Below, piece by piece: positions 38,998 to 57,300 of a DNA stretch of 64,000 bases; position 1 is the first letter of the stretch, and every line of letters begins with the position of its first letter. The position numbers and the translations under genes are program-made. The stretch is from Antechinus flavipes (Eukaryota), in assembly GCF_016432865.1 (NCBI RefSeq), contig NC_067399.1, positions 48,360,001 to 48,424,000 of the forward strand, in the 5' to 3' direction. Under the pieces are notes generated by a model that did no database searches, had not been told where the DNA came from, and saw only the letters and a program-made list of their open reading frames with translations.

Positions 38998-39080
38998 CTC
39001 CGCCGGCCTCCAACCTCCGGCCTCTGGTCTGGCTTCTCCCGCAACTCGCGCTCCCCTCCCCACCCGGCCTCGACCTCGCA
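38998..39080 (-). other. UTP4: UTP4 non-coding exon 1 (5' boundary approximate)
   Basis: Strong donor GAG|gtgagt at 38998/38997 inside the CpG island; exon 2 has only 2 nt of UTR, so an upstream exon is needed. Confidence 0.7.
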
Positions 39081-39139
39081 CCACGTGCGCGCGCTTTGAC
39101 CCCGGAAGCAGTTGTTGGCCCCACGGAGCCGGAAGTGCG

Positions 39140-39232
39140 CAGACAGTGTTAGCGGCGGCGGACGGTGGCGGCGGGAGGTTCGGTTGTCGCCCGTTGGCCG
39201 CGAGGCGCCGCGTTCGGCGGCCGCCATTGCAG
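39140..39232 (+). other. CHTF8: CHTF8/DERPC non-coding exon 1 (5' boundary approximate)
   Basis: Donor GCAG|gtcagg at 39232/39233 just downstream of the ETS pair. Confidence 0.6.
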
Positions 39233-42200
39233 GTCAGGCCCCGGGCGGGGAGTGCGGGAGGGGGAGCGGAAGGGGCCCGCGAGGCGAGGGCCGGGGCTTG
39301 GGGAGGCGCGGCGGCGGGAGGGCGAGAGTGAGGGAGCTGGCGGCCCGGGGAGGGAGGGAGGACGGCGCGGGAAGAATGGCGGGCTCGGGGAGGCGGGAGG
39401 GGCCGGGGCTGAGGCGAGGCGGCGGAAGCGAGCGCGGGCGGGGGCGAACGCGGCGGAGCCGGGGCGGGGGCGGCGGAGCCGATTTCGCAGGCCGCGTCGG
39501 GCCAGGCCGGGCATCCGTGAGCTCAGGAGGGCGCAGGGAGGGGGGTCGAGGCGGAGCAGTGGGGGCCGGGCCCGGCGCGGGTCTCGCGGGCAGGCGGGCG
39601 AGCGAGCGACACGTGGGTCGGGGGAGGATGAGTGCGTGGGAGGGTGGCGGGGCGTGCAAGGCCGTGTGACCGAGGCGCAGACGGGGAAGAGACCGGGAAC
39701 CCGCTTGGACTGGGGATGCAGGAAGTGGAAGACGAGGGGAGGAGAGTGGACTCAGGAAGTGGAGGGGAAGGGAGGAGGGGGCCAAGAATCTTCCCCCCCC
39801 TCCAGGGGATTGGGACAGTTGTCTGAAACTGGGGAGGGACGAGCTCTAGGTTCGGGGCGTGGGGATCCTCGGGTGGAAAGTAAATTCTTCTAGGAGGAGG
39901 CAGAAGCTTGGGAGGGAAAAGGGAGCGGGGGGAGAGGGTCAAGGACTCGGAGCTAGTCCGACTAATGGAAGGTTTGGGCAAATACTGAAGTAAAACTGTT
40001 GAACTGAATCGGCTTGGACAGCCCGGGGCCTGCCAAGGCCGTAGTTGATCCTGAGGAGAAGCAGAATCATAAATGTTCCCACAGTGTGTTGTGAAAAATA
40101 ACACGTGTATGCATAGTGTCCACACACATTTTTGAAACCATCCCTCCCTGATGAAAAGTTCTGAAACATCCAGCTCCACATGTACATCACAGCCCTTATG
40201 GGGGAGGGGGGACAGGGTCTGCCCCTCCACTTTTAGCTCCTATAAACCTGTCAGTAGACAGGATGCCTTTTGATGCTCAGGCAGCCTATTTCCAGTCACA
40301 GTACCATGAAAACACTGCTAATAAAATCTTCTCATCTGTATTTTTAAACCACGTGGATTTTTCATTTTTGGAGGAAAGCACATGGAAAAATTCCTAATAT
40401 TTAGAGTAGAAATCCATTTTGACCTCTTTCTGTGATGCAATCTGGTAGTAATGCAAGTTTCAATTTTCTCTTTAACTATTTCTCAGTGTAATCCCATCAT
40501 TTTACTGCTGAGGAAACAGACACAAGTTCAATAATTTGCCCAAGGTCCCACATATAGTCAGTGAGGTGAGATTCAAATCTAAGCTCTGACTCTAAATCCA
40601 GCACCCTTCAAACTACTCATCACTATATTCTGAAACTACTCTAAACATGTTAAATGAAGTAACTAAAGAAAGTTCTTTGCAAGGTGTCTTTCATATAGTA
40701 AGCACTATATAAATGTTAGCTATTTTAAGGAAGTTTCTAGAGAAGTACAGGGAAAGTTATTAAGATTAAATTCATTTGCTCCTCCAAGTAACAGCTTAAG
40801 GTGAAGCCAACATAAAGTGTTATATACAAAGTTTTTTCAGAACAATAAAATTGGAGCATGTTTTCCATGAGAGATGTATTCTAAAGCCAAGATTTTTTCA
40901 TGAACTTTGTAGGGAAACCCTTAGAGTTAAAAAAATTTGACTTGACAAATAATTGAAAGTTAAAGTTGGTAGTAGGGAAAGGGATGCCTAAGAACAGGAA
41001 GTGAATGAAGGATTATCATGTGAATAATAAAGCAGAATTTTCTCTAAGGATTTCTTTTAAAATTTGTCCTTCAGGCTTTGTGTATAGCACCTTTTCCTCC
41101 AGGGCAATCTTTAACTTTTAAGTGCCTGTTAATTCTTGATGAACTCATTGACATGAATTTTTATTTTACTTTTTAGTGTTCTCATTTAAAAATCTGAAGT
41201 TGAGAGAGAGTAAGGGGCAGTTTATAGGTATTGTCTATTCCTTAAGTCCACTTTGTCCTAAGAAACCATATATTTTAGATTGAATAATTTTAGGGAACAT
41301 GTAAATATAGAACCATTTTCTATGATAGCTCGCTTCTATGGTTTTTCAAATGAAATAAACAATTTGCTAGAATTTAATGAACCAAGAACAGTTTGGTATT
41401 TTAGTCACCAGGAAAGATGAATATTGTTAGGTCTTGATTGCTGCAAAGAATAAATCTCCTAAAGTGATGACATGTATTCGTGTTCATAATATTTGAAATT
41501 ACAAATATCTAAAATATGGCTTAGGATTTTTTTCTCCTGGCCAACCGACAAAAACAGTTAACTGTTTCACTGTCCTTGGGCACATCAATTAATCTTAACT
41601 TGGACATTAATTCCTTATAGCCACAATCTTTAAGATTTTTTTTTTATCCTCTCTCAAAACATCTAGCATAAGTATCTTGCCTTCCTTTTAGTGCCTTAGG
41701 TACTCAGTAAATGATCCATAAATGAATAACATGAGAATGAAGTTAATGTTTATAAAGCATATTGAAAATTTAAATATCAGAAGGAAATAGAGAAATGAGT
41801 AATGGTTCCTAAAGTATAAGTTTATTGTAATAATCTTATCCAGTATACTCGAAAGCCTTTTTTTCTTTTTAAATAATAGGTTCTTTAAACTGCTTTTTAT
41901 TATTTGATATTTTTTTTATCTCATATGAACTGGATTACTTATGTTGGCTTGAATGTTTTTATCTTTAGTTCAAGGAGTGAAACTTAAGTTATATGCTTAA
42001 CAAAACTGAATTGCCACTCCTAATACAATAGATTTATGCTTATATTTGCTTTGTAGGGAAAAACTAAAGTGGATTTGGGGGTACTTCCACTGACTTGTTT
42101 TTAATTCAGTTGTATAACTTAATGGGCCTTTATAATGGTGCATCAGTACCTGTGAAATATTGTCACTTTGCTATCACACATTTCTGTATAGATCAAATTT

Positions 42201-44664
42201 TATATGCTTCAAAAGCTAGAGTTTATTTTCCCAGGTTGAATAAAGTTTGAAATATAATTAATTTGGGAATTAGAAATCTTTTTTTGTCAGTTGGTTTTTT
42301 TTTAAACAAGATTTGACTTATACTCTATTCTCTGTGCTTTTTTTCTTTAGATATACCTTAATATTACATTCTCCTTTCTAGAGAGGCAGAAATTCAACTC
42401 CTTTTGTTCTTCAGCCCTCCCTTCTCATCACACCCTAAGCAATTGAGTAAATGAGCTATGAGCTTTTGGGCCTGCCCAAACCCCAAAGAGTAAAATATTT
42501 AGGTACCAGAAGTAACAGTAGATATCAAGAAATAAGGAAGGGAATAGACAACATAGTTTTATGATCACAGGAGATTTCTGTATTCTGAAAGAGAGAATAT
42601 TCTTTGCCAGGTAACTGTATATATGTCCTATTATTTTGGGTAACAGATAGTATGCACAGGAATGTTCCCACATCAGACTTGGTATGCAGTAATTCTTGTG
42701 ATCTGTTCTAGACTAGCTGGAAATGACAAATGCTAGAATACCCAAGCTGAGTTTTAGTTTTTAGTATTACTTTTGCCGGTCCATTGCAGATGTCTATCTG
42801 TGACAATGATATATAGAGAGAATGGGGACTTCGAGGTTTATGTCAGAATGTGTTCATCCCAATACCACTTAGCTTCCAAGTCATAAATGAGATAGTAAGG
42901 GCCAAATTTGACAATGAGTAGTACACTATAATTTCAGTATATTTAAGTGCTGCTATGTACCTACATAGTCTTGACCAAGTCATTAAATTTCTGTGAATCT
43001 CAGGTTCTTCATCGGCACAAGGTAGAGATTGTTTAGATTTTTAAAATTAGGGAATCGTGAAAAATGCTCTTTTTTCTGACTAAATCCTGTGATTTCTTTT
43101 ACTTTCTTTTGAATACAGTTGTAATGGAAAGTTAATCTTTCAGAACAGATGCCTGGATTATTTCTATGCTATAGTCTCTGACGTTATTTATAGTTGCTAG
43201 CCAATAGTTTAACGGTTTTTGTCTATTCCTCATCCTGATCCATTCAGTGACTACTGAGGACATCCATAACATCTTCCCAATAAGCAAGTGTTAACAAAAT
43301 ATTCTTTCTGGGTTGCTATTCAGCCAAGAAGGAGGGCAGATTAGGACTGGCCTCACAAAGTGTGGTGCATACTATATCTTGTATGCTTGCCCACAGTCTT
43401 CTTAAATATGCACATTTGCCTATTAGGAACTGATTTTTGTTTCATTAGGACCCCACTGATTTCCAAAATATCTGGTAATCATATATTTTGAATTCCAAAT
43501 CTAGTCACATGGTTTGACAGACCTTTTCACCATCATTGTCAGGTAGTCAACATTGAAAAAAAACACCCAGAAATCTGGAACATAGAGTTGTCTTATCTGG
43601 CTGCAGAAAACAAAATGTTAGTTGCTGCATTTTGAATTGAAACAGCTCAGTAGATTGTTAAAAGAAAATTCTTTTGTTTTACCCTCTGAATACTCCGCTG
43701 TGAATACATCTGCACAGATGTTTTCTCATACTCTGACTTATAGACATTTAAGGTAAAAAAAAAAAATCATCAATCATCATAAAGTTATTTAGTGGCTGGA
43801 TAATAAAGTTGAGTATTAGACCTAGAGTCAGGAAGTCCTGAGTTCAAATCTGGTTTTACACACAAGCTGGATGAGTCATTTTATTTCCCACCCAGGATGG
43901 TTGTGAGGATCAAATGACATAAGATTTGTAAAGCTCTTTGCAAACATAGCATGCGCTATGTAAATAATAACTATTAAGTACCTCTAATAAATATAGACCT
44001 TGATGAGCCCATAAATTTTAGGAACTCCTCTTCATCAAGTATGTGACATTTAGGCTTTTAATTTGTGAGGATGTTTTCTCCATTTCCACAAATCTATAAT
44101 AATAAGAATAATAACTTTAGAGAGTTAAATTTTTCTGTAATTTATAGAAAAGGAGTGTTTCTGTAGAAATAATGAATTGCTTTTCAATTCAGAAATTTTT
44201 TTAGGACTTACATTATTATTATTTTCTTGCCTTTTAATTACCTAAGAATATATTAATCCTACTAATTAATTGCCTCATAAGTTTTCTGGGTTGAATTCCT
44301 TCTTATTCCTCAGAAACTAGTTTTAGTTAAAGTCCCAATCAGATTGTTAGATGTTTTGTAGTGAAAGGAAAGATAGACCTGGAGTCTAGAGACTTGGTTT
44401 GAGTTTGAACAATTAATAATTGTGTCATCAGGGGCAAAAGCCTTTACCCTCTCAGACTCAGTTTCCTAATACATAAAAAGAAGGTAAAGCTTGCACTACC
44501 TGTTGTATAGGGTAGTTATAAACCATGCAATATTATTTTTCTCTGTTGTACTTACTCTTATTTGTTGTCAGTGTTTACCCCTAATAAGTCCTTTTCATGG
44601 TCCCTTTTCTCTTGTGTTTGCAATTTGAAATTTAATGAAATTGCATGCATCAGTTTCAAAAACA

Positions 44665-44740
44665 TTTGTTTGCAGAACTAATGAGAAAATGTACAAAGTT
44701 TTTGAATTTTGTCTGTTTTCTCATTAGTTCTGCAAGCAAA
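44665..44740 (+). other. Long inverted repeat (25-bp stem, 26-nt loop)
   Basis: TTTGTTTGCAGAACTAATGAGAAAA (44665-44689) pairs with TTTTCTCATTAGTTCTGCAAGCAAA (44716-44740): 20 contiguous Watson-Crick pairs, one G.U, four more pairs. Confidence 0.9.
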
Positions 44741-45282
44741 AGTTTTGTGATTTTAGAAGTTGATTCTTAAATTTTTTTTGGTCCCCTCCTCCCCCTCAAA
44801 TAAAACATAGTAGATAAATGTGTGGGATGATTAGGCTATCCATTTCAAAATGTGTTGTTTATTCTCATTGTCATTTAAACATACTCTCGAACAGTACACA
44901 AATTTGCCACAAGATGACACTGTTGTATAAGACAAATCTCAGTACAGTACATTTGGTTTCCCTTGTCTGTGGGAAATGACCTTAGATGAGATGAGTACCT
45001 AAAATATGTGGCAGACTATTTTAAATGATGCTACAGACATTTTTGTAACTCAACTTTTCCTGGAGACCTTTTGTGTTCTAAAATAATCTTTTCTGACTGT
45101 ACAAAGGAGGGAAGTCAATGAAGTTTACATTGTATCTCCTGGGAAAAGTCAAAGTGGTATTTTTTTTTTTTAATTCTTCCTATTTGGCCAAGAAGAAAGC
45201 TTCAAGTTGTCCTTATATAAATTTTTTTTTTCCTTTCTCTTTTCAGCTTCTCTTCAGTTTGCTTTTCTGAGAGTAAAAGCTG

Positions 45283-45305
45283 ATGGTGCAAATTGTGATT
45301 TCCAG
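45283..45305 (+). CDS. CHTF8: CHTF8 first coding exon (exon 2, probably starts 45247)
   Basis: ATG GTG CAA ATT GTG ATT TCC AG|gtgagt = MVQIVISS; polypyrimidine tract and tttcag acceptor at 45246. Confidence 0.93.
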
Positions 45306-45565
45306 GTGAGTGAATCCATGTTGATGATTTTATTCCATTGTGGGATGAATAGTTGGGGTTGGATAAGTTTGATGATTTTCTCAAAGAGCTAAGATCCCAG
45401 AGTGCATCTGCGCAGATCCTTGCATTTCAACCTTTAGTTCAGTGCCTAACACTACCCACTTTCCAGTAAACTTGATCAAAAAGAATGGCTGAGCCTTTTA
45501 TGGGAGGTATACTGCCCATCCTTCACCCCTCAAAAATATTGTAACCACCAGCCCTTTGCTTGCAG

Positions 45566-45683
45566 TGCTGGGGCTGGAGGCTTGGCAGAATGGGTGCTGA
45601 TGGAGCTACAGGGGGAGATCGAGGCTCGCTACAGCACTGGATTAGCTGGAAACCTCCTGGGAGACCTACATTACACCACCGAG
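45566..45683 (+). CDS. CHTF8: CHTF8 exon 3 (118 nt)
   Basis: [39 protein letters not shown] (Ctf8 family motif); ttgcag| and |gtgagg. Confidence 0.96.
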
Positions 45684-46122
45684 GTGAGGGGGCTTTCTTT
45701 ACCCTGCCTAACGCCTCAGAAAAACAAGCCACAGTAAGGTGGCCCTCCCAGAGCCCACAGTGGGGACTGCCCTAAGGTTTGTTATGTGAGGTCTGGCTAA
45801 TGTCCTCAGGAATCCAGTCGTGCTCCTACCCTACCTCTGAAGCATCAGAGAAGTTTTATTTTGGGGTAACTGGAGAGGTTGTATCTTTAAAAATGGAAAA
45901 TGTATTTTTCTTTGTGACTGGGAAATGCACAGGGCTGGGGAGGTTGTCAAATGTAGCATCTCAGAGAGATGTTGTGAGAAATGCCAAGGAGTAAGGCAAA
46001 GGACTTGAACAGGTTGATAGGGTTGCCTGAGTTTTCTCTTACCCTGAACCTCAGGTATCTTGTGTTTTTTTTTTTTTTTTTTTGTTTTGTTTTTTGTTTT
46101 GTTTTTTTGTTTTTTCTTGAAG

Positions 46123-46347
46123 GGAATTCCTGTGCTGATTGTGGGGCATCATATCCTATATGGGAAAATTATCCGTTTGGAGAAGCCATTTGCTGTCCTG
46201 GTAAAAAGTGGTTCTGGGGAACAGGAATGTGATGAAAGTGGCAAACAGACAGCAACTCGGTACCTAGTGAAAGCACTAATAAAGAACAAGATTCTCTTCA
46301 AAACTCGCCCAAAACCTATAATCACCAACGTTCCCAAGAAAGTATGA
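46123..46347 (+). CDS. CHTF8: CHTF8 last coding segment; total 121 aa (Ctf18-RFC subunit Ctf8)
   Basis: [74 protein letters not shown]; acceptor ttgaag| after a long T/TTTTG tract. Confidence 0.97.
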
Positions 46348-48389
46348 AAGAACCAAGGATTTTTTCTAGAGAGCGGCCAACTCCCTGGACTCGTGCCCCA
46401 TTTCCACCCCGAGGACGGATGGACGGTTCCCTTGGTTCACCAATGGCTCCTGTTTTGAATGCAGGCAACACAATGGGGGTAAACCCTGATCCTTTTCTTT
46501 TGGCCAGTGTTCTTGGTGGAAATCTGACTCGATTCCCAGCTGGCCCCCTCGCCAGAAATCCAGCTCCTTTTCCAAAGCCATCTGGCCCGTTGGCCTCATG
46601 TCCGCCTTCCTTCCCAGCTGGTGCCCGTGACTCAAATGTGGTTCCTTTTCCAAGAGGGATGAATCCTCCAAGCACAAGCTCAGTTCCTTTCCCAAGGTCA
46701 GGTGGCCCACTTGGCTCAGGTCTAAACCCTCGAGCAGGTATTGCCACGGGTGCAGGTCCTATGTCTAACCCTAGGCCAGGTGGGCTCCCGGGCACAGGTC
46801 CTATGCCTAATCCTAGGCCAGGTGGGCTCCCAGGCACAGGTCCTATGTCTAACCCAAGGGCAAGTGGTCTTCTGGGTGCTGGTCTTGATCCCAGAGCAGG
46901 TGGTCTGGGCTCAGGTCCTGGTCCTGACCTGAGACCAGGAGGTTCGCTAGGCACAGGTCTCGGCCCAAACCTAAGGACAGGTGGCCTTATGGGCACGGGC
47001 TCTGGTCCTGACCCCAGAGGAAGTGGGTTCTTGGGTACTACTGGCCCAGGTCCTAATTCTAGAATAGGTAGCCTGGGACCGGGCGGCCTGGGCGCTGGTG
47101 GCCTGGGACCGGGCGGCCTGGGCGCTGGCGGCCTGGGAGCAGGTAGCCTGGGCGCGGGCGGCCTGGGCTCAGGTGGTGTTGGCACCAACAGCCTGGGTGC
47201 AGGTAATGTTGGTGCAGGTGGCCTAGGCACAGGTGGCCTGGGTGCAGGCAACCTGGGAGGAGGTGGCCTGGGTGCGGGTGGCCTGAATCCAGGCCCAGGC
47301 CCAGGCCTCAACCTAAGAACCAGTGGTCTCTCAAACACAGGGCATGTCCCTGACCCCAGGGCAAGTGGATTTCTGGGCACAGGGCTTGGTCCTAACTCTA
47401 GAGTTAGTGGCCTAGGCACAGGCCCTGGTCCTGGTCCTAACCCAAGAGCAGGTGCCCCGGGACCAGGCCCTGGTCTTAACCCAAGAGTAGGTCTGGGAAC
47501 AGGCCAAGGTCCTAATCTGGATCCCAGAGCAGGTGGTGTCTTGGGTTCAGGAGCTGGTCCCAATTTGAGAGCTGCTGGTCTCATAGGCTCAGGATCTGGT
47601 CTTGATTTGAGAGCCTCTGGATCTCTAGGTATGGATCTTGCTCCCATTTTAAGGGCAGCTGGCCTCCTTGGAGCAAATTCAGCCCCTTTCTCACAGTCAT
47701 CTGGAAATATGGGTCCAAATCCATCTTCCATGACAAGAGCAACAGGTCCTATGGGTCCAAACTCTGGTCCTGGTTCTAGGATAGTTGGCCTTGCAGGTCC
47801 AAACTCTTCTCCTATGCCAAGGGCTAGTGGCCCATTAGGTCCTAATTCAACTCCTTTCTCAAGGCCAACTGGCCCCTTAGGTGTAAACTCGACTCCCTTT
47901 CCAAGGGGGACAAATCCTGCAGGCTTGAACCCAGCTACATTTTCCCAGTCCACCAGCTCAAACCCACCTACTTTTCCACGTTCCACTGGTCTTCAGGCAC
48001 ACAGTACAGCAATTTTCCCAAGGTCATCTGGTCCCTTGGGCCCAAACCCACCTAATTTCCCAAGATCAGCTGGACTGCAAGGCCCAAGTCCAGCTTCTTT
48101 CCCAAGATCCACTGGCCCACTCGGTCCTAGTCAAGTCCCTTTCCCCAGGTCTGCTGCTGGTTCACTAGGTCCCACATCAGCAAGTGCTCCAGGCATAAAC
48201 CAAGCTCCTTTTCCAAGGCCATCTGGTCCCATGGGTATAAACCCATCTTTTCCTAGGGTCAATGGCCCTATAATGAAGACTGTGGTACCATTTCCTAGGA
48301 GTGGAAGCCTTTCTGGTCCCGGTCCAACTTTTCCTAGACCAGGAGGCCCGTTGGCTGCAATGTACTCGAATGGAATGCTGCCACCCTAG
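46344..48389 (+). CDS. DERPC: DERPC proline/glycine-rich nuclear protein (681 aa), second ORF in the CHTF8 last exon
   Basis: Intronless 681-aa ORF. N-terminus [19 protein letters not shown] and C-terminus [11 protein letters not shown] match recalled human DERPC (~524 aa). The ATG overlaps the CHTF8 TGA. Confidence 0.92.
46755..46858 (+). repeat. Coding 42-bp tandem repeat (GPM[S/P][10 protein letters not shown] x ~2.5) in DERPC
   Basis: ggtcctatg(t/c)ctaa(c/t)cctaggccaggtgggctccc(g/a)ggcaca repeated with a 42-nt period. Confidence 0.9.
47067..47291 (+). repeat. Coding 15-bp tandem repeat (15 x G-G/S/N-L/V-G-x pentapeptide) in DERPC
   Basis: [75 protein letters not shown]; 47071-47098 is identical to 47101-47128. 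Confidence 0.95.
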
Positions 48390-49139
48390 AGACCACCCCC
48401 TCCCGCCTAGGCTACATTGGCTGCAAGGTACCACGGCTTTGGGCAAGATGGAACGGCTGTGTTCTGAAGGCCAGAAAGGCTTGACTTGATGGCCATTTCT
48501 TTTCACGGCTTATTTCTCCAATGAAGATGGAGTCTTCGATTTGCTTGTGAGACAAGGACTCTGGCAGGCAAGCTCAACCCTAAGGATGGGGAGAAAGACT
48601 CCCAGTGTCCTGTAGCCTGTGGTGCTTTCTCACTGCTTTGTGCCGACTTCTCTCTTTCTTACTCATTTCTTGGATTGTTCTCCTGGACTTTTCCTCAGGG
48701 ATGCAAAGGCCTGCCAGTCCCAGCTCATTCTGTACTACCATCTTCCCTATCAGAGAAAACCCGGGTAGCTGCTTTTGTTAATTGTGTTCCAGTTTTCAAA
48801 CATTACTCAGTAACTTTGTATAGAGCAGCTCTGACTGGATAGTCCTTTTCAGTTCTAAGTAAAGCTTATTTCTTTATGCCACAAACTGGACATTGGCCAC
48901 CTCTGGAATTCACAGGAGGCCAAAGTTGTGAAGCAGCTTCTCGCCTGCCCTTCTTGCTACTGTTAACTCCCAATCAAAGAACCTCAAGATTTTGAATTTG
49001 ATGTTGGCTCTGGGACCTAGGGGGTGGGGGGGATGGGAGGTAAAAGGGAGGGGGAGGGGAATAATCACTGCTTTTCAGCCTGGTATGAAGGCATCGTTGG
49101 TGTTTCATTCTACAATATATCATTTCTTACTGTTTCTTT

Positions 49140-49145
49140 AATAAA
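49140..49145 (+). terminator. CHTF8: Likely CHTF8/DERPC polyadenylation signal AATAAA
   Basis: First AATAAA I found after the DERPC stop (~750 nt downstream), in U-rich context. Confidence 0.55.
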
Positions 49146-49812
49146 TGGGATGGGAGGTTGCTGATTTTGAGCCCATTTTGTTACCTGGCCCAGGGGTAAG
49201 GAACCTCACCTTTGAGTTTTAATTGTTTTAGCTGAAGTTGGCTGTGAGCCTACATTCTCTTCTGTGTAGCTTGTCTAGCTGCTTTTGCTGTAGGAATAAG
49301 AAAGCTTACATTTGTGTTCACAGCTGGAGCTTTCTTACTCATCTGCCTGATAATTCATCAAGGATTTTGACCCAAATTACAATCTGAGTTAGGACCCACT
49401 TGTATATAACATCTTTAATATTGTTCCTGGGCTAAATGCACAATCACCTTTGACAGTTTTGTCAGTTAAATGGACTGAGTTTATGTTGGAAATTATCTGG
49501 GAAAGTGGTTGGATGGCAAATAAACCAGAGAGATGGAAGTTAAATTTCAGTTCTTGTTCACTTAAAGACTCAAGACTAGTATCAAGCACAGTGAACCCTT
49601 TATCTTTGGGAAACTGCTTTGCCGAGAGATCAGTGTCATCCTGTGAGATGTATTGAATGGTATATTACCTGGCATACCAGTATCTTTTAGCCCCATTTCA
49701 AGTTCCAGGTTTGGGGCTTACTGAGACACACCTAAGTTTTTTACACTGATTAAAAACAAGGGGGATGAGGACCTCTAAGAAATAATAAGACTGCTATTCT
49801 CGTGTGCAAATT

Positions 49813-49818
49813 TTTATT
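49813..49818 (-). terminator. HAS3: Likely HAS3 polyadenylation signal AATAAA
   Basis: tttatt on +, ~2.1 kb past the HAS3 stop, preceded on the mRNA by AU-rich sequence including TATTTAT (49885-49891). Confidence 0.5.
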
Positions 49819-51947
49819 TTGACAAATACATCATAGTATAAAAACTTTGACCTTTTTGAAAAGTGAAAAAAATGCAGGTAAAAAATAAATACATTTACAA
49901 ATCATTGTAGAAATAAGTAATTACAAAAGATCAGAAAAACCCTCATTAAAATGGGATTTAAGAGAAAAACCAAATTTTTCATTAATATAAATTCTCTTCC
50001 CTTGCACGAAATAGGGATAAAGCAGATGATGTTTGGTTTTGTGTTTTACAGAAAATATAAAAAATAACTTATAAAAACCAGTCGAGGTTGAAAGTTGTGA
50101 GCCCACTTATCTACCTCTGCTCCTTTTCTATCTGGGAATCTGGCAACAGTAGCAGGATTGGAGGAACTCTGATAGTAGGACAGCTAGGAAAAACCTATTT
50201 TTTCCTTAACCATTTTTAGGTAAAATTGAGAAAAGTAAGCCCTTAGTTTTACATCTGAACCTTGCATTGGCTGGCTGGATTTCCTCCATTATTTAGCTCA
50301 AAAGCTCACTCATTAATAAGCAAAACTTTGGAATGAACTAGAGCTGGTACCTCTGGCCTCTTCCTCATCCATGATGGTCTACCTGCCAGGAGGAGTAGAG
50401 AGCTGCTGTGATGCCGCAACTGCTGGCAGCACGCACAAGACACAAACTCGTTTGAAAAGAAAAGCACCATAAGTTGACCCAGTGGCCATTTGGAGCACAT
50501 TTCGTTCTCTTGCAGGAAACAACAGGTGTCCTAGAGGTTTTTCCCCTCCCCCCCCCAATTTGCCTTTTGGGTATTAGAGACTGATTCAGTAGTGAAGAAT
50601 AAAGTCAGGAATATTATTGTGGTCTTGCTAATAAACAAGAGATGCTCAAAGTCCCAAAGATGAGTTTAAACTAGTTCATGTTAACTCAAGAATTGAGAGT
50701 ATACAATTTATGGTGATTCAGCCAATGAGATGTAGAAAGAAGTGAGGAAAAAAAAAAACCTTAGGAACTGGAAACGCCCCATTTCCTGATTCTGTGTTGC
50801 CTAGAAATAAGCAAATATAAAGCTGAAAAATTTGAAACTTTAGCTGTGAGAAAACTGAAAAATGCCTAGGGGATAAGATGGAGAAACTTAAGGGCATAAG
50901 TGACAACTAAGAGACAAAAATTGCATCTGTAAACTATAGTAGAATCTAAGACAGCAGGTTGTAGTGGAGGGCAGGAGGCTGGATTTCATATAATAAGCAA
51001 CAGCTTGTTGGAGTTGACCTGAAATTCAAGTCTAAGCAGCTTCATAAACATCTACTTGCCCTCAGTCACCCCAAACAGTTATCTACCTGTCTTGGGCAGA
51101 CTTTTCTGCCACTTGAAATACTAAACAGTGCTATGGAGGAAAGAGAAGTGGTTCACTTAGAAACCCCATGGATTTAGAAGACTTCATAATTTCCTAAGCT
51201 TTAAATGATTGTGTTATAATTTCTTGAGTTGTTGCACATGGGAAGCCTTAATCCCAAACTCCAAATTTAAGAATTCCATCCATCATATGACTAAAATTTA
51301 CTGTGGCCTGTAGTATACTAAAAGAACATAGATGACTGACATGTGTGCCCTCTTCCTGGTATAAATTCACCTTCAACTGCTACTGGAAGTTTCTCATCCC
51401 TGCTGGTTTGGTCACTTTCTGGGTATTCAGGAATACTTGATCTTCAAACTAAAGCCCCATTCTCAGACCCTGTTCCCTGATACCCAGAGGCCAGTCCACT
51501 TCCTTGGGACAATCATAGGGATCTAGCGATTGGAAGTGTGGGCGGAGCTGGCTCACTCACCAAAAAGCTGCTGCTAAATGGAGGCCATTCTCAGATGTGC
51601 ACAGCACACTTGGTTCTGGATTACTCCTGGGCTTCAGGGAAAGGAAACAATCTCCAGAATCATTGTCAGTGCAGAGGTACAGGAGCCTCAGTGTCCAAGG
51701 AATCTAGTGACGGTTTCATTTGAATCCATGGTCTGTGTAATGGGATGGTTGCTCCAGGCCATACTGCAGGTCAAACTCCTTTGCACTGAAACTTGTCCTT
51801 TGGACGACAGTTAATAAAACAAGGACACAGCCCGCCCGCCCGCCCGCCCCATTTCTTTTCCTTAAACTGGTAGGAGTCAAGTTTGCCCCTTCCCCTCCCT
51901 GGCCCATTGCACTTTTCCCACGTTGCTCAGAGAGCTGCCCTTGCCCG

Positions 51948-52871
51948 TCACACTTCAGCAAAGGCTAAGCTGTATTGCTCAGGTTTCCTTCCACAGCGTC
52001 GGGCAATGATGGCCAAGTACAGCATAAGGAGTGCTACCCAGTAGCAGGCATACAAGATGGCCCCAGATACTAGGAAGGCCAGCTCTGTCTCACTGAATAG
52101 GTCCTGGCAATAAGCTGTGTAGGCCAACCCTCCCAGAAGGACTGCCACCCAAATAGACACGGGAATCAGTCCAATGAAGTTCACGACAATGGTTTTTCGG
52201 CCTGAGGTGCCCCATCCAGACTTGTTGATGGTGGCAATGGCAAAGATCTTGGCTGGCAAGAGACTGGACATGTAAAGGAGAGAATAAAGGGACATGAATA
52301 TCATTTCTGCATTGCCCCGAAGGAAGCAAGCATAGGTAGCCTTGATGATGCCCACAAGCTGCACTGTTAGCAAGAAGAGGAGGATGTTCCAGACACGGCC
52401 CCGATAGAACAACTGGATGACGGTAGCAATAAGAAAGAAGGGAAAGAAACCTGTCACCACAGACTCATAAGTCATCCAGAGGTGGTGTTTATGGAACCAC
52501 AGGGAGTTGTAGAGCCACTCTCGAAAGTAAGACTTGCTCCAGCGAGTCTGTTGGTTGAGCCAACGGAGGTACTTTGTAGGGGTCTCTGTGAGGCACTTTG
52601 AGCGTGCGGTATACTTAGTCTGGTAACCAAGGCTCAAAACCCGATTGGTAAGGTGCCGGTCATCTCCAAAGCTGCACTTGCTGCCTAGAAATTTCTGGTG
52701 GTACCAATCTTCTAGGAACTGCTGAAGAAGGGTGTTCCGGTACATGCCTAAGGGCCCACTGATGCACTGAACACAACCAAAATAGGACTGGCAGGCTCTT
52801 TCCACATTGAAGGCCATCCAGTACCGCACGCTACTCAAGAAGGAAATCCAGGAGTCATATTTGTTGAGGAT
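51948..52871 (-). CDS. HAS3: HAS3 hyaluronan synthase 3, last coding exon (924 nt incl. TGA)
   Basis: [18 protein letters not shown]...GDDRHLT...QQTRW...[10 protein letters not shown]2 synthase GDD and QxxRW motifs, C-terminal TM helices, HAS3-type C-terminus; acceptor ttttag| at 52872. Confidence 0.98.
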
Positions 52872-53040
52872 CTAAAAAGGAACAAGAGAACTCTTGTTAG
52901 CTTCAACACACACTCCATTTCTCTGACAACTAGAGGCTACAGACAGAAGCATCTGGAGCATTCTGGTATTCGTGAATTTTCTAATCCAAAGCATCTTTAG
53001 GTCTTCTGCCTCACAGAACAGCCTAGGGGATAAAAGAGAT

Positions 53041-53422
53041 GTTGCTAAAGGGCTACCCTGGTTCCCTAGGAAAATGTCCAGCTTCCAGTTCTGAGCTAGC
53101 TAATGAAGGAAAATTTGAGGGTAGCAGGAAATTTTAATTTCCTAGGTACCTAGTTCCAACTCCACACTGTTTAACCCCCACCCCCCCTTACTCAATTCAA
53201 ATTTTGTCATTATGTTATCAAATGGTTAAAAGTTGCTAAAGGGCTACCCTGGTTCCCAAGGAAAATGTCCAACTTCCAGTTCTGGGCTGGCTAATGAAGG
53301 AAAATTTGAGGGTAGTAGGAAATTTTAATTTCCTAGGTACCTAGTTCCAACTCCACACTGTTTAACCCCCACCCCCCCTTACTCAATTCAAATTTTGTCA
53401 TTATGTTATCAAATGGTTAAAA
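53041..53422. repeat. 191-bp direct tandem duplication in HAS3 intron 3
   Basis: Copy 1 53041-53231, copy 2 53232-53422; 5 substitutions seen, no indels. Confidence 0.95.
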
Positions 53423-54215
53423 GCCAGTACTTAATGTTACGAGGAGATAGCAGCTGAGGGTCATAACAGACTGACAAAATGGGAGATTTGCTTGAGCCTA
53501 GAATGTTCTCTCCTCATCTCTGCCACCTTGCTTCCCAGCTAAAGTTCCACTTTCTGCAAGAAGCCTTTCCTGGTCACTCTTAATATGAATGCCTTCCCTT
53601 CTTATCTCCCATTTATCTTCGTACTTAGTAGTTTATATTTTGTGTCCCTTATTAGAAGATCAGCTTCTAGAGAGCAAGGACTATCTTTTGTCTTTCATTA
53701 GCTTTCCAGCACTTAAGTACAATACTTGGCACATGACAGGTGCTGAATAAATGCTTTATTTTACTGATAGGCTTACTGTCCTGCCCAAGAGGTTTCTCTT
53801 GGCTTTTCTCTATAAATATCTCTTAGAAGAGAATCTGGACCCCAATGTCATTAACTGAATGATGGATCTCTTAGAGATTTTTAGTCCCCAAAAGGAATCC
53901 CTCAAAAGGAATCCCCCAAAAGGAACGTCTGGATTTCTTGAAGAGTTACTCAGAAACAAAGTTTATCTTGAAAATTAGCCACTGACCTTCTAGGAAACTC
54001 ACTTGTCAAGAGGTCCAGATTTTCTCCACTGCAATCTTTTAGTCTTCTAAATTCTCAGCTCTCAATATCCCATTCTTTTCCCTCCAAAGCCACCAAGGGA
54101 GGGGGGGAAATTCCATTCTTCCCACCCCAAGCCCAGTGCTCTACTCCAGCCACAAGAAATTAAAAATAACTGTACCATAGGGCACTCTCCAGGAAAATCC
54201 CTAAATGTGTCTTAC

Positions 54216-54317
54216 TTGGACATCTCCCCCGACTCCACCCACTCGGGGATCCTCCTCCAGAACTCGAAGCATCTCCACAGTACACGCTGGATCCAGCACT
54301 GTGTCCGAATCGCACAC
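54216..54317 (-). CDS. HAS3: HAS3 exon 3 (102 nt)
   Basis: [34 protein letters not shown] (DxD motif); tgtcag| and |gtaaga. Confidence 0.97.
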
Positions 54318-57300
54318 CTGACAGAACAAGCATACGGTCAGCGTCTCTTAGGCTCAGATCCCCAGATCCCACGAAGTCCCTTTGGCTATCTGTCACTATC
54401 TCTTGCAACACTCCCCTACTTTTCCTGCTGTACCATTTTGCATTAGGATGGGGGAAGATAGATTAAAGAAAAGTTCCGGGTCTCCTAGGCAGTGTCTGGT
54501 TGACTTGAGTAAAGGGCACTAAACATGTAAAGAGGTGGGTGGGAGAGTCCCTATGCAGGGAAAGAAGGATAAGAGTTTGGGTTCTAGGTTTCACATCAAA
54601 CAAGTCTTGGCCCTCTCCAAGGCTATCGATATCCTTGCAGACAAGGAGGAGAAATGCCAAGCAGAGGAGCTAGTTTAAGCTCTTATAGTACAGCTCCTAT
54701 GTACCAACATTTTATTTATCTGGGGAGGAGGTGTTCGGGAACAAGTCACAACAATGGAACAACGGTTTTTCAGCCTGAAGTGCCGAAGCAGTGGCAGATC
54801 TGCCCAATTAACTCAGACCCCCAAGAAAACTGTCTCTGTCACATCACTTCCATCCACAGTCAACATCAGTACACCAGGAGATTACAAGGAAAGTCTAGTA
54901 TGTTTAGCAGTTCAGACAAGTCCAATCATCAGAGAATGGAGCAATCTGAAGCTAAATAAAAGGGGGAAAAAGCAATCCCATATCTGCATGGTGAGGGTTA
55001 GAGCTTCAAAGGATTTAAGAACTGCTGAAGCATGTATAAATTATATCTGATTGTTTACCATTTCAGGAGAAGTGGGGGGGGGGTTGGTTGGTAGAATCTG
55101 GAACTCAAAACTTTAAATAAAAATGTTTAAAAGTAGGAGAGAGAAAAAAAAAATACTTCAGCTAAAGAAAGGCCCTGAAGAAAGCAAAGGTGGAAGGGGC
55201 TTAGCAGGAGCTTGGGAACTGTGAGGCTAGTGTAATGTTCTATTAGGTTTTTTCCCAGGAAAAAAAGGCTATGTAATCGGTACTCTTGGGAATAATCTGA
55301 CATGGACAAGACCAAACTCCATAGATTATTTTTTACCATACCCATGCCTTTTCTCTTTTTTCTTAGGTTCTCCTTCATGTAATCCAGGGCCACTTGAAGG
55401 GCAGTTGCCTTCTCTTGTTATTTGTGAACCAATACCTATGGCTGAAACCCACAAACTTCATTTTGAGAAGTTAAATTGAGCATTATTATAATCTAAGAAT
55501 GAAGGGAAAGCATTTATTAAATGATAACTATATGTAAAGCAGTCCTTGGGCACTGAAGACATGTACAGAAAAGCAATCTCTCTCTCAAGGAGTTCCCATT
55601 CCAATGGGAGAGAGAATTAAGGTTTTACCTGTAAGCTAGATAGATCAGAGAAGCTGTCAAGGGTCAACTAGTCCATTTCATTTTATGGTAAGGAAACTAA
55701 GGCTCAGTTCAGTAGGTATTAAGTGATGCGTTTAATGTCACAAAACTCCCTAAAAGCCAGTGTATTTGTGATCAGAGTATATCCACACTTGGGATCTTGA
55801 TAAAACCTATCAGTCTGCCCATTCTGCCTTCTGCCAACTTTTATTGGGTCTATATTCTTAGGACCAAAGATTATATTCTAGGTGGGTCAATAATCCAGTT
55901 TCTGGCTTTCTTACTTAATAGAGTGACATATAGAACCTTTTCAGTCTGAAATAAGAAAGCAAGCAGGGTAAGAATAATTCGCTAACATGCTTAAAATTCC
56001 AAGTAATTCTTCTCAAAATTGAAAAAGAAATGCCTAGATCTAAAATTTTTGCTATTCCTAAATTTTAATTCCTGAGTTTTTTCCTAAAAACAGCTAACAT
56101 TTATATTGTGTGCTAAGTGCTTCACAATTATCTCACATTATCCACATTACAATAATTCTGGGAAGTAGGTGCTAGTATTACCCCATTTCACAGATTGCCA
56201 CAAATTGAGGGAAACAGAATTTATGTGACTTGGCCACATTCACCTAGCCAGTGAGTGTCTGAGACCTATTTGAACATAGATCTTCCTGATTTCAGCCCAG
56301 TGCTCTATCCAGAAGCATGTGACTTTAGTATGCCCTTTTTATTTTTCATTCAGCCTGGAATAGAGATATTAAGCAAGATATTAAGAGAATAGCCAGCAAG
56401 TGGGTTGTTAGAAATACAATTTATAGTTAATTAGAATAAAAGGAGTCTGGGTAATCCACAAATGCAATCCAAAGCATGCTGATATCAGTTCCAGAGGAAT
56501 CTCCCAAACTAAGAAGAGATTCCCAGAATAATCCTCCCTGGACTCTAAGGATATCTTACTTAAAAGCAATCATTCATTCCTACTTTTCCCCCTTATTCTT
56601 CGAATTCAAATAATTCCCCTCTCTTCTCCTATTGTCAATTTTCCTAAAGGGATCCATTCCTGGGTGAATAAGGATACTAAGGTAGGGAGCAGCTTCTATG
56701 GAGTGGACCGCATAGAGAGCACAATAGTGTTTTCTCCCTCTCTGGGAAGATTTAAATCTTGGATCAGACAGAAGGATTCACACTACATTTATAACTCATC
56801 ACCAATTATCTTTTGCTGATTATGCCTATAGGCAGTTATCCCACAGCAATAAAGTGGAGGGAGTCGGGCACCTGGAGCACAGCTGCTCATTGATCCAACA
56901 AAACACACAGGAAGTAAGATTTCTTTTTAGCTAGTTTTCTTTAGGAATTGTTGAAGGAGGGAGTGGCTTTTGTGGTGACAACAGAATAGATCAACATATA
57001 TTTCTAAAGAAACTTTCAACTGGAGTAACCATGTCCTATTTGAAATTCTGGACTCCTGAGCAAAAACAAAAGAACAGTTTGATAAAAAGCCCCGTGATAA
57101 ACCACAAAAAGCTAACTTTTCCAAAACCCAACTTCCCTCTCTAAAATATAGGGTTAAAACCATGAAGAGAGAAATTGGAGATTTATGAGTAATTCATTTG
57201 CACTTAGTAAATATTTGCTAAATATCCAAGCACTCTGCTAGATGATAGGGTCTCTGTCCCCACACATCTTAGATGGTATAACTTAAGTAGTTTATAAATA

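What the first reader, a model, noticed from the sequence alone, without database searches (positions are those of the whole stretch)
46338..46352. ATGA stop-start overlap couples CHTF8 and DERPC: a bicistronic mammalian exon conserved to marsupials
Seen: AAA GTA TGA AAG, where the CHTF8 TGA (46345-46347) overlaps the DERPC ATG (46344-46346). As recalled, human has the same junction, implying long therian conservation. Established: AUGA/UAAUG overlaps drive termination-reinitiation in RNA viruses and translational coupling in bacteria, and are very rare in mammalian genes. No calicivirus TURBS-like TGGGA lies 40-80 nt upstream (the nearest is 46161), so any coupling would use a different signal. 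This is the strongest candidate for an under-described system in the window.
Basis: partly seen in the sequence, partly recalled or inferred. Interest (0 to 1): 0.75.

Follow-up and report, generated by a model that had tools for sequence, protein, structure and literature searches.

The report
CHTF8 stop overlaps DERPC start codon
The four letters ATGA really do end the small replication-factor gene CHTF8 and start the large DERPC protein in this marsupial, but the gene pair is already annotated, and nothing in the sequence shows that the overlap works as a virus-like stop-and-restart signal.

Summary
Observation confirmed. ATG 46344-46346 (DERPC, 681 codons) overlaps TGA 46345-46347 (CHTF8).

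It is already known. The window is identical to part of assembly GCA_016432865.2, whose gene calls hold both genes with this overlap. A 2015 paper reports ribosome footprints and peptides for the human and mouse ORF. A 2026 preprint figure shows the overlap.

New here:
- The same ATGA plus a long ORF occurs in a second marsupial, echidna, mouse and a turtle, so it dates to the amniote ancestor, older than therians.
- Xenopus, pigeon and alligator have GTG-TGA and no ORF.
- DERPC is under purifying selection (dN/dS 0.14-0.22 in mammals).

The coupling idea is not supported, though not excluded:
- No TGGGA lies nearer than -129 or -183.
- There is no stable or conserved RNA structure.
- Synonymous sites vary freely in the last 25 CHTF8 codons, except the last four.
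- The CHTF8 tail has no Asp runs.
- CHTF8 ends KKV-TGA (KRV-TGA in alligator) at the same place in species without DERPC, so conservation follows from double coding.

Skipping the 118-nt exon turns CHTF8 into a 12-codon upstream ORF ending 205 nt before the DERPC ATG. A mouse isoform joins exon 1 straight to the last exon. My best reading (0.5) is translation mainly from such isoforms.

The parts
39000..39999 (.). CpG/GC-rich island, likely the shared promoter and non-coding first exon of CHTF8 (head to head with the UTP4-like gene)
   Evidence: GC 0.78 and 0.65 in the two 500-nt bins against about 0.33 around them. It is the only such island upstream of the ATG exon. A WD40 gene lies upstream on the minus strand in the orthologous loci. 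Exon boundaries are not determined.
45247..45305 (+). CHTF8 ATG exon (ATG 45283; coding part 45283-45305, ends in phase 2; donor GT at 45306)
   Evidence: MVQIVIS plus AG then GTGAGT. The 5' boundary 45247 is inferred from an AG acceptor and from similarity to the mouse exon in RNA contig L009. It is not shown by reads.
45566..45683 (+). CHTF8 118-nt coding exon (length is not a multiple of 3, so skipping it shifts the frame)
   Evidence: The encoded residues match Petaurus and echidna CHTF8. Nothing from that stretch was sent to a search tool afterwards.
46123..46347 (+). CHTF8 coding part of the last exon (74 codons plus TGA), after a long pyrimidine tract and AG at 46121-46122
   Evidence: Translation [10 protein letters not shown]...PKKV*. 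Pfam PF09696 Ctf8, E 1.1e-08. 93% identical to Petaurus CHTF8.
46344..46347 (+). ATGA: DERPC start ATG (46344-46346) overlapping the CHTF8 stop TGA (46345-46347)
   Evidence: Identical AAGAAAGTATGAA in L001, L002, L003 and L006.
46344..48389 (+). DERPC ORF, 681 codons, Gly/Pro/Ser-rich (G 23%, P 18%, S 11%), with repeated ...NPxxFPR... motifs
   Evidence: dN/dS 0.14-0.22 against mammals and 0.35 against turtle. Called as a gene with exactly this product in GCA_016432865.2. Atlas clusters are named DERPC / CHTF8 isoform X1.
46136..46138 (+). TGA that would end a 12-codon ORF (MVQIVISREFLC*) if the 118-nt exon were skipped; it lies 205 nt before the DERPC ATG
   Evidence: In-silico splice of 45283-45305 to 46123 onward. 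Length and distance are the same in echidna and mouse; in turtle it is 56 codons ending 73 nt before the ATG.
46160..46267 (+). Three tiny out-of-frame ORFs in the last exon (46160-46204, 14 codons; 46227-46232, ATG-TGA; 46232-46267, 11 codons), all ending before the DERPC ATG
   Evidence: In all five DERPC-bearing sequences every upstream out-of-frame ATG in this exon opens an ORF that ends before the DERPC ATG.
46230..46235 (+). Double TGA in the DERPC frame, which closes that frame upstream of the ATG

Best explanation
This is the known CHTF8-DERPC gene pair. A Gly/Pro-rich nuclear-protein ORF (DERPC) occupies what would otherwise be the CHTF8 3'UTR. It sits in the same last exon, is driven by the same promoter, and starts at an ATG made from the A of the last CHTF8 codon (GTA) and the TG of its stop. 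That part is shown. Inferred: DERPC is translated mainly from splice isoforms in which the CHTF8 ORF is removed or cut down. One isoform would skip the 118-nt exon, leaving a 12-codon upstream ORF that ends 205 nt before the DERPC ATG. Another would join exon 1 directly to the last exon. Scanning or re-scanning 40S subunits would then pass one to three tiny ORFs and start at the DERPC ATG in the ordinary way. On this reading ATGA is the first place a new ORF could begin without disturbing CHTF8, and it is held fixed by two coding constraints. It is not a dedicated coupling signal. A minor contribution from post-termination reinitiation on the full-length mRNA is not excluded.
For: Identity. 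The arrangement is conserved with GTA-TGA plus a long ORF in a second marsupial, echidna, turtle and mouse, and GTG-TGA without an ORF occurs in Xenopus, pigeon and alligator. DERPC is under purifying selection from its first codons. CHTF8 ends at the same place with the same residues in species without DERPC (KKV in Xenopus and pigeon, KRV in alligator), so the stop position predates DERPC. The skip isoform gives a short upstream ORF ending before the DERPC ATG in all four lineages with data. Mouse protein P0015 is the translation of exon 1 joined directly to the last exon, as shown by matching it to the exon-1 sequence of RNA contigs L009 and L010. All out-of-frame ATGs in the last exon of DERPC-bearing species open ORFs that stop before the DERPC ATG. 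Xenopus and pigeon have an ATG 16 nt upstream (AAT GT), where all five DERPC-bearing sequences have AAC GT. This is a weak hint that the region is scanned. Literature: the human ORF is annotated as a splice variant (PMC4732427). Michel et al. state that the footprints need not mean a bicistronic mRNA, because alternative transcripts exist in human and mouse (PMC4832365). No CpG island or other promoter-like composition lies next to the last exon.
Against: Mouse RNA contig L006 (2733 nt) carries exons 1-4 and the whole DERPC ORF on one molecule, so structurally bicistronic mRNAs exist. The exact overlap is what one would expect if the ORF was first expressed by ribosomes that had just terminated. 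The last four CHTF8 codons (CCC AAG AAA GTA) are invariant in all five DERPC-bearing sequences. The AAC/AAT contrast rests on 4 against 3 lineages.
Confidence: 0.5

Rival explanations
1. Termination-reinitiation. Ribosomes finishing the 121-codon CHTF8 ORF on the full-length mRNA stay on the RNA at UGA and restart at the overlapping AUG. This would use a signal unlike the viral TURBS and would be the main route to DERPC.
For: The 4-nt overlap is kept in every DERPC-bearing lineage sampled. Six AUGs precede the DERPC AUG on the full-length mRNA (45283, 45590, 45600, 46160, 46227, 46232), so leaky scanning cannot reach it there. Mouse contig L006 holds both ORFs on one spliced RNA. The junction region is A-rich and unstructured and the last four CHTF8 codons are invariant. 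An ORF born in a 3'UTR is most easily reached right at the stop (inference; see the review PMC10275272).
Against: In mammals, reinitiation after a long ORF normally needs a special element (PMC10275272). No TGGGA lies nearer than -129 (mouse) or -183 (all). The consensus fold is weak (-9.2 kcal/mol, covariation term +0.8) and the window sequence folds worse than its shuffles (z +1.32). Twelve of 22 conserved-residue codons in the last 24 CHTF8 codons vary synonymously, much as at the start of the exon (15 of 21). The C-terminus [15 protein letters not shown] has none of the Asp runs needed in the known cellular cases. Known efficiencies (about 1% for CASQ2, 10-20% for caliciviruses) sit poorly with the 'high ribosome occupancy' reported for human and mouse. 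Conservation of ATGA is explained by double coding.
Confidence: 0.25
2. DERPC has its own access: transcripts that start in, or retain, the last intron, or internal ribosome entry. Ribosomes would then never meet the CHTF8 start.
For: Many Logan contigs from mammals read from the 3' end of the last intron straight into the last exon (P0004, P0013, P0014, P0017, P0020, P0022, P0026, P0027; L001). About 20 nt of that intron (window 46039-46058) is conserved between marsupials and eutherians.
Against: Those contigs may simply be genomic DNA or pre-mRNA; their library type is not known to me. No CpG island or GC rise lies in that intron. The conserved motif looks like a distant branch point ahead of a long pyrimidine tract. 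Such transcripts would add further upstream ATGs (45981 in the window).
Confidence: 0.1
3. Leaky scanning from the cap of the full-length mRNA past the weak CHTF8 AUG (C at -3).
For: The CHTF8 AUG has C at -3 in both the window and mouse.
Against: Five more AUGs, one of them in the CHTF8 frame, lie between it and the DERPC AUG.
Confidence: 0.03

Closest known systems
Human and mouse CHTF8-DERPC locus (16q22.1 in human)
   Same: Same genes, same last exon, same ATGA junction, and the same N-terminus MKEPRIF (mouse contig L006). Ribosome footprints and peptides are reported for the downstream ORF (PMC4832365). The overlap is drawn in the TOGA2 preprint.
   Different: Only lineage detail. I compared no human sequence.
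TURBS-dependent termination-reinitiation of caliciviruses (VP1/VP2) and influenza B (M1/BM2)
   Same: The stop and start share nucleotides (AUGA or UAAUG), after a long upstream ORF (PMC10275272).
   Different: There is no UGGGA motif within about 90 nt, no flanking conserved stem and no synonymous-site constraint. The downstream ORF is 5-6 times longer than the upstream one, the reverse of the viral cases.
Coupled termination-reinitiation in cellular mRNAs (CASQ2 and four others; Gould et al. 2014)
   Same: A human-type cellular mRNA with an overlapping second ORF reached after ORF1 terminates (PMC3923131).
   Different: Those cases need runs of Asp (GAUGAU repeats) at the ORF1 C-terminus and give about 1% output. 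CHTF8 ends [15 protein letters not shown] with a single AUG.
Dual-coding genes served by isoform switching plus short-uORF reinitiation (for example the TP53BP1 smORF, PMC10193022; MOCS2 and SNURF-SNRPN from general knowledge)
   Same: Two unrelated proteins come from one locus. The second is reached because an alternative transcript shortens or removes the first ORF (for the TP53BP1 title and abstract).
   Different: Here the second protein is the large one, and the two ORFs abut by exactly 4 nt. Isoform use is not shown in this species.

Membership tests
CHTF8-DERPC gene pair of amniotes | The upstream ORF is a Ctf8-family protein of about 121 residues ending PKKV | tested here: met
   Pfam PF09696 E 1.1e-08. 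93% identity to Petaurus and 84% to echidna CHTF8 over the last-exon part. Exons mapped.
CHTF8-DERPC gene pair of amniotes | The downstream ORF starts MKEPR..., is Gly/Pro-rich with FPR repeats, and lies in the same exon | tested here: met
   Atlas clusters are named DERPC / CHTF8 isoform X1 (scores 0.88-0.89, a lead only). dN/dS 0.14-0.22.
CHTF8-DERPC gene pair of amniotes | Synteny: a WD40 (UTP4-like) gene upstream on the opposite strand and a HAS3-like gene downstream | tested here: met
   Called genes in the loci.
TURBS-type termination-reinitiation | Stop and restart codons overlap or lie within a few nucleotides of each other | tested here: met
   ATGA at 46344-46347.
TURBS-type termination-reinitiation | Motif 1 (UGGGA, complementary to 18S rRNA) within roughly the last 90 nt of ORF1 | tested here: not met
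   The nearest is at -183 in all five sequences, with one more at -129 in mouse only.
TURBS-type termination-reinitiation | A conserved stem (motifs 2 and 2*) presenting motif 1 | tested here: not met
   RNAalifold gives -9.2 kcal/mol with covariation term +0.8, and 2 of 30 pairs compensatory. The window sequence has z +1.32 against shuffles. Only five sequences, so power is low.
TURBS-type termination-reinitiation | Downstream ORF expression depends on translation and termination of ORF1 at that site | not testable with these tools
   Needs reporters or Ribo-seq.
Asp-run-dependent cellular coupled translation (Gould 2014) | Runs of Asp / GAUGAU repeats at the ORF1 C-terminus within the overlap | tested here: not met
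   The C-terminus is ...[15 protein letters not shown] and the overlap is 4 nt with one AUG. The criterion comes from PMC3923131.
Isoform switch plus short-uORF reinitiation | An alternative splice form turns ORF1 into a short ORF that ends well before the ORF2 AUG | tested here: met
   In silico only: 12 codons ending 205 nt upstream in the window, echidna and mouse; 56 codons ending 73 nt upstream in turtle.
Isoform switch plus short-uORF reinitiation | That isoform exists and carries the ribosomes that make ORF2 | tested here: inconclusive
Mouse P0015 shows an exon-1-to-last-exon form. The literature says splice variants are annotated. Nothing is available for this species.

The most novel reading that the evidence does not exclude
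The ATGA is a working cellular termination-reinitiation site. After a 121-codon ORF, mammalian and turtle ribosomes restart on a 530-750-codon ORF without a TURBS, a stable structure or an Asp-rich nascent peptide. They would use only an unstructured A-rich junction (invariant CCC AAG AAA GUA UGA). The arrangement would have been kept since the amniote ancestor and lost, together with the GTA codon, in archosaurs.
Probability: 0.2. Interest if true: 0.75.

Novelty: already known. Interest (0 to 1): 0.3.

Why it matters
If DERPC were made by restart after a long ORF, it would be the first deeply conserved cellular example producing a large protein. It would show that vertebrate ribosomes can do this without the viral RNA element. 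As things stand, the locus is a tidy, already annotated case of a new protein born in a 3'UTR. A single synonymous change (GTG to GTA) at the last CHTF8 codon separates species with and without it. The question left open in the papers I could search is simple and testable: which mRNA form feeds the DERPC start codon? The answer also matters in practice, because guides, siRNAs and expression probes aimed at 'CHTF8' hit DERPC too.

Tried and rejected
I sent nothing from that stretch to any search tool afterwards: Rfam was run on 39000-45500 and 45570-50000 only, and the exon-3 protein was taken from 45570.
- The search for homologous proteins with DERPC, whole and then residues 1-110, returned only three mispredicted fusion or pseudogene-like proteins. 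The listing of cluster members found none of four DERPC sequences in that collection, so protein searches could not give the phyletic range.
- P0001 carries Alu-like peptide stretches and is from a primate chromosome. I could not tell whether it is human, so I did not fetch or compare its contig. I left P0019 alone for the same reason.
- The look-up of encoding contigs gave no record for mouse P0015, Latimeria P0050 or Amia P0059, and no DNA for Petaurus. There is therefore no fish outgroup and no squamate.
- tblastn of DERPC against the frog, pigeon and alligator downstream DNA with filters off gave only low-complexity noise. It was replaced by ORF-length and FPR-motif counts.
- Rfam: no family at gathering score.
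- Sun et al. 2002, the original DERPC paper, is not held. The eight literature searches run found no paper that dissects DERPC translation.
- Leaky scanning on the full-length mRNA was rejected because of the six upstream AUGs.
- An N-terminally longer DERPC was rejected because of in-frame stops.
- The 554-codon ORF on the minus strand (46322-47986) was treated as a mirror effect of the stop-poor Gly/Pro-rich repeats, not as a gene.
Full report
**What is in the window**

The plus strand reads AAG AAA GTA TGA at 46336-46347. In one frame this is the end of an [13 protein letters not shown]...[15 protein letters not shown]. That ORF begins after a long pyrimidine tract and an AG at 46121-46122. 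In the frame one base earlier, the ATG at 46344-46346 opens a 681-codon ORF that runs to 48389. So is the statement that the nearest upstream TGGGA is at 46161.

**Gene structure**

- The upstream ORF matches Pfam Ctf8 (E 1.1e-08). Over the last-exon part it is 93% identical to sugar-glider CHTF8 and 84% to echidna CHTF8.
- Two more coding exons lie upstream: an ATG exon (ATG 45283, donor at 45306, phase 2) and a 118-nt exon (45566-45683).
- The only CpG island nearby is at 39000-40000, which fits a non-coding first exon and a promoter shared with the WD40 (UTP4-like) gene on the other strand.
- The downstream ORF is Gly/Pro/Ser-rich (23%, 18%, 11%) with repeated NPxxFPR-like motifs.
- It has no Pfam match.
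- Its nearest Atlas clusters are named 'putative DERPC proline and glycine rich nuclear protein' and 'chromosome transmission fidelity protein 8 homolog isoform X1'.

**It is already annotated**

An exact-product look-up with the 681-residue translation returned one place, GCA_016432865.2, record CM028218.1. The fetched locus is identical to window 39344-55389. From memory, untested, this assembly is Antechinus flavipes. In that record CHTF8 (121 residues) and the 681-residue product are both called, with coordinates overlapping by four bases.

Literature:
- Michel et al. 2015 (PMC4832365) show high ribosome occupancy over the 'CHTF8 3'UTR' in human and mouse and cite mass-spectrometric detection. 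They warn explicitly that this does not prove a bicistronic mRNA, because alternative transcripts exist.
- Ezkurdia et al. [quoted passage not shown] - I found no paper in the library that dissects how DERPC is translated.

**How old is it**

Loci fetched through CHTF8 orthologues show the same AAGAAAGTATGAA followed by a long ORF in these species:

| Source | ORF length |
|---|---|
| Second marsupial contig (L001) | runs off the contig |
| Echidna | 632 codons |
| Turtle, Carettochelys | 754 codons |
| Mouse RNA contigs | 533 codons |

The sugar-glider annotation has the same 4-nt coordinate overlap with a 758-residue product, but no DNA was available.

Xenopus laevis, a pigeon and the alligator end CHTF8 at the same place (KKV, or KRV in alligator) but with GTG TGA. 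Downstream they have no long ORF in that frame and no FPR motifs. In the pigeon only 1.1 kb separates CHTF8 from the next gene.

Given that turtles group with archosaurs (established phylogeny), the simplest reading is that DERPC arose by the amniote ancestor and was later lost in archosaurs. I have no squamate and no fish outgroup: three look-ups failed.

**Is the ORF real and does it start here**

- dN/dS is 0.22 against the other marsupial, 0.14 against echidna, 0.22 against mouse and 0.35 against turtle. The other two frames have stops.
- In the first twelve codons mammals differ almost only at third positions of the DERPC frame.
- Upstream in that frame there is a double TGA at 46230-46235 in the window. 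In echidna and turtle a TAA lies six codons before the ATG.
- The overlapping ATG is therefore the first possible AUG start.

**Does the overlap work as a coupling device**

I tested the sequence predictions of the known mechanisms.

1. TURBS type. No TGGGA lies closer than -183 in any of the five sequences, apart from one at -129 in mouse. The -183 copy is simply the Tyr-Gly-Lys codons of CHTF8.
2. Structure. The five-species consensus fold of -120 to +36 has -9.2 kcal/mol with a positive covariation term. The window sequence folds less well than its shuffles (-18.6 against a mean of -23.0, z +1.32).
3. Synonymous constraint. Among four independent DERPC-bearing lineages, 12 of 22 conserved-residue codons in the last 24 CHTF8 codons vary synonymously, compared with 15 of 21 in the first 25. 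Only the last four codons (CCC AAG AAA GTA) are invariant. That is what any start-codon context would show, and with so few lineages it could be chance.
4. The cellular Asp-run mechanism of Gould et al. 2014 needs GAUGAU repeats and poly-Asp at the ORF1 end. CHTF8 ends [15 protein letters not shown].

Two further points weaken the coupling argument:
- That paper counted 4368 human transcripts with overlapping second ORFs, so the sequence feature as such is not 'very rare'.
- The stop position and the final residues (KKV, or KRV in alligator) are the same in species that lack DERPC. The conservation of ATGA in species that have it therefore follows from two coding constraints and says nothing about coupling.

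**What speaks for coupling**

- On the full-length mRNA six AUGs precede the DERPC AUG, so leaky scanning is out.
- Mouse contig L006 is a spliced RNA (exon 3 joined to the last exon) carrying exons 1-4 and the whole DERPC ORF. Structurally bicistronic molecules therefore exist.
- An ORF born in a 3'UTR is most easily reached next to the stop codon (inference). I keep this reading at about one in four.

**The alternative route**

- The 118-nt exon is not a multiple of three. Joining 45305 to 46123 gives MVQIVISREFLC followed by TGA at 46136-46138, 205 nt before the DERPC ATG.
- Echidna and mouse give the same length and distance. Turtle gives 56 codons ending 73 nt before the ATG.
- A mouse GenBank protein (P0015) is exactly the translation of exon 1 joined to the last exon, as seen by matching it to the exon-1 sequence in RNA contigs L009 and L010. 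That form has no CHTF8 ATG at all.
- In either form the leader holds only one to three tiny ORFs. In the window these are 46160-46204, 46227-46232 and 46232-46267. All end before the DERPC ATG in all five DERPC-bearing sequences.
- Xenopus and pigeon have an extra ATG 16 nt before the junction (AAT GT), where all DERPC-bearing sequences have AAC GT. This is a weak hint that the region is scanned in species that make DERPC.
- The stop of the 12-codon ORF lies in the last exon, so the skipped form should escape exon-junction-dependent decay (inference from the usual rule).

Together with the database history of the ORF as a 'splice variant' and the caveat of Michel et al., I take isoform-dependent ordinary initiation as the most likely main route (0.5). 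The isoforms are not shown for this species.

**Verdict**

- It is already known, down to the overlap.
- The proposed stop-restart coupling is an open, testable idea for which the sequence offers no positive signal.

Noticed in passing
L006:1-165, L009:1-180, L010:20-205 (mouse RNA contigs); window about 45550-45602: Three mouse RNA contigs use an acceptor 14 nt upstream of the normal one for the 118-nt exon. This shifts the CHTF8 frame into a 23-codon ORF whose TGA overlaps the in-frame Met-20 ATG (TGATG), after which a 102-residue N-truncated CHTF8 is open (P0016). 
   Followed up: partly
window 46039-46122: About 20 nt of the last intron (46039-46058) is conserved between marsupials and many eutherians; it shows up as ...ALNLR(H/Y)L... 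in ORFs that read from the intron into the last exon. A 60-nt pyrimidine tract follows. It looks like a distant branch point, a layout common at regulated acceptors. It is less clear in echidna and absent in turtle, frog, pigeon and alligator.
   Followed up: partly
L005:6545-7667, L011:6566-9165, L004:13209-17441: Pigeon, alligator and Xenopus lack DERPC. The last CHTF8 codon is GTG, there are no FPR motifs downstream, and in pigeon and alligator the CHTF8 introns and the gap to the HAS3-like gene are strongly shortened.
   Followed up: yes
window 46322-47986, minus strand: A 554-codon ORF lies antisense to DERPC. The Gly/Pro-rich repeats are poor in stop codons on both strands, and I treat it as a composition effect.
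   Followed up: no
P0001, P0002, P0003: Database proteins that run from CHTF8-like residues into DERPC-like residues with frame changes at the junction (...PRKYER...). They are probably gene predictions on retrocopies or mis-joined models. P0001 is from a primate chromosome and was left alone.
   Followed up: no
window 47067-47291: A run of GGLGx repeats makes this DERPC about 150 residues longer than the mouse one.
   Followed up: no
(run table): Runs of organisms C and D hold 0.87-0.97 of the sampled words, while all runs of organism A hold 0.56-0.58 whatever their size. This fits about 2% divergence, so the only raw RNA runs on offer (X20-X22) are from a close relative, not the source species.
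   Followed up: no
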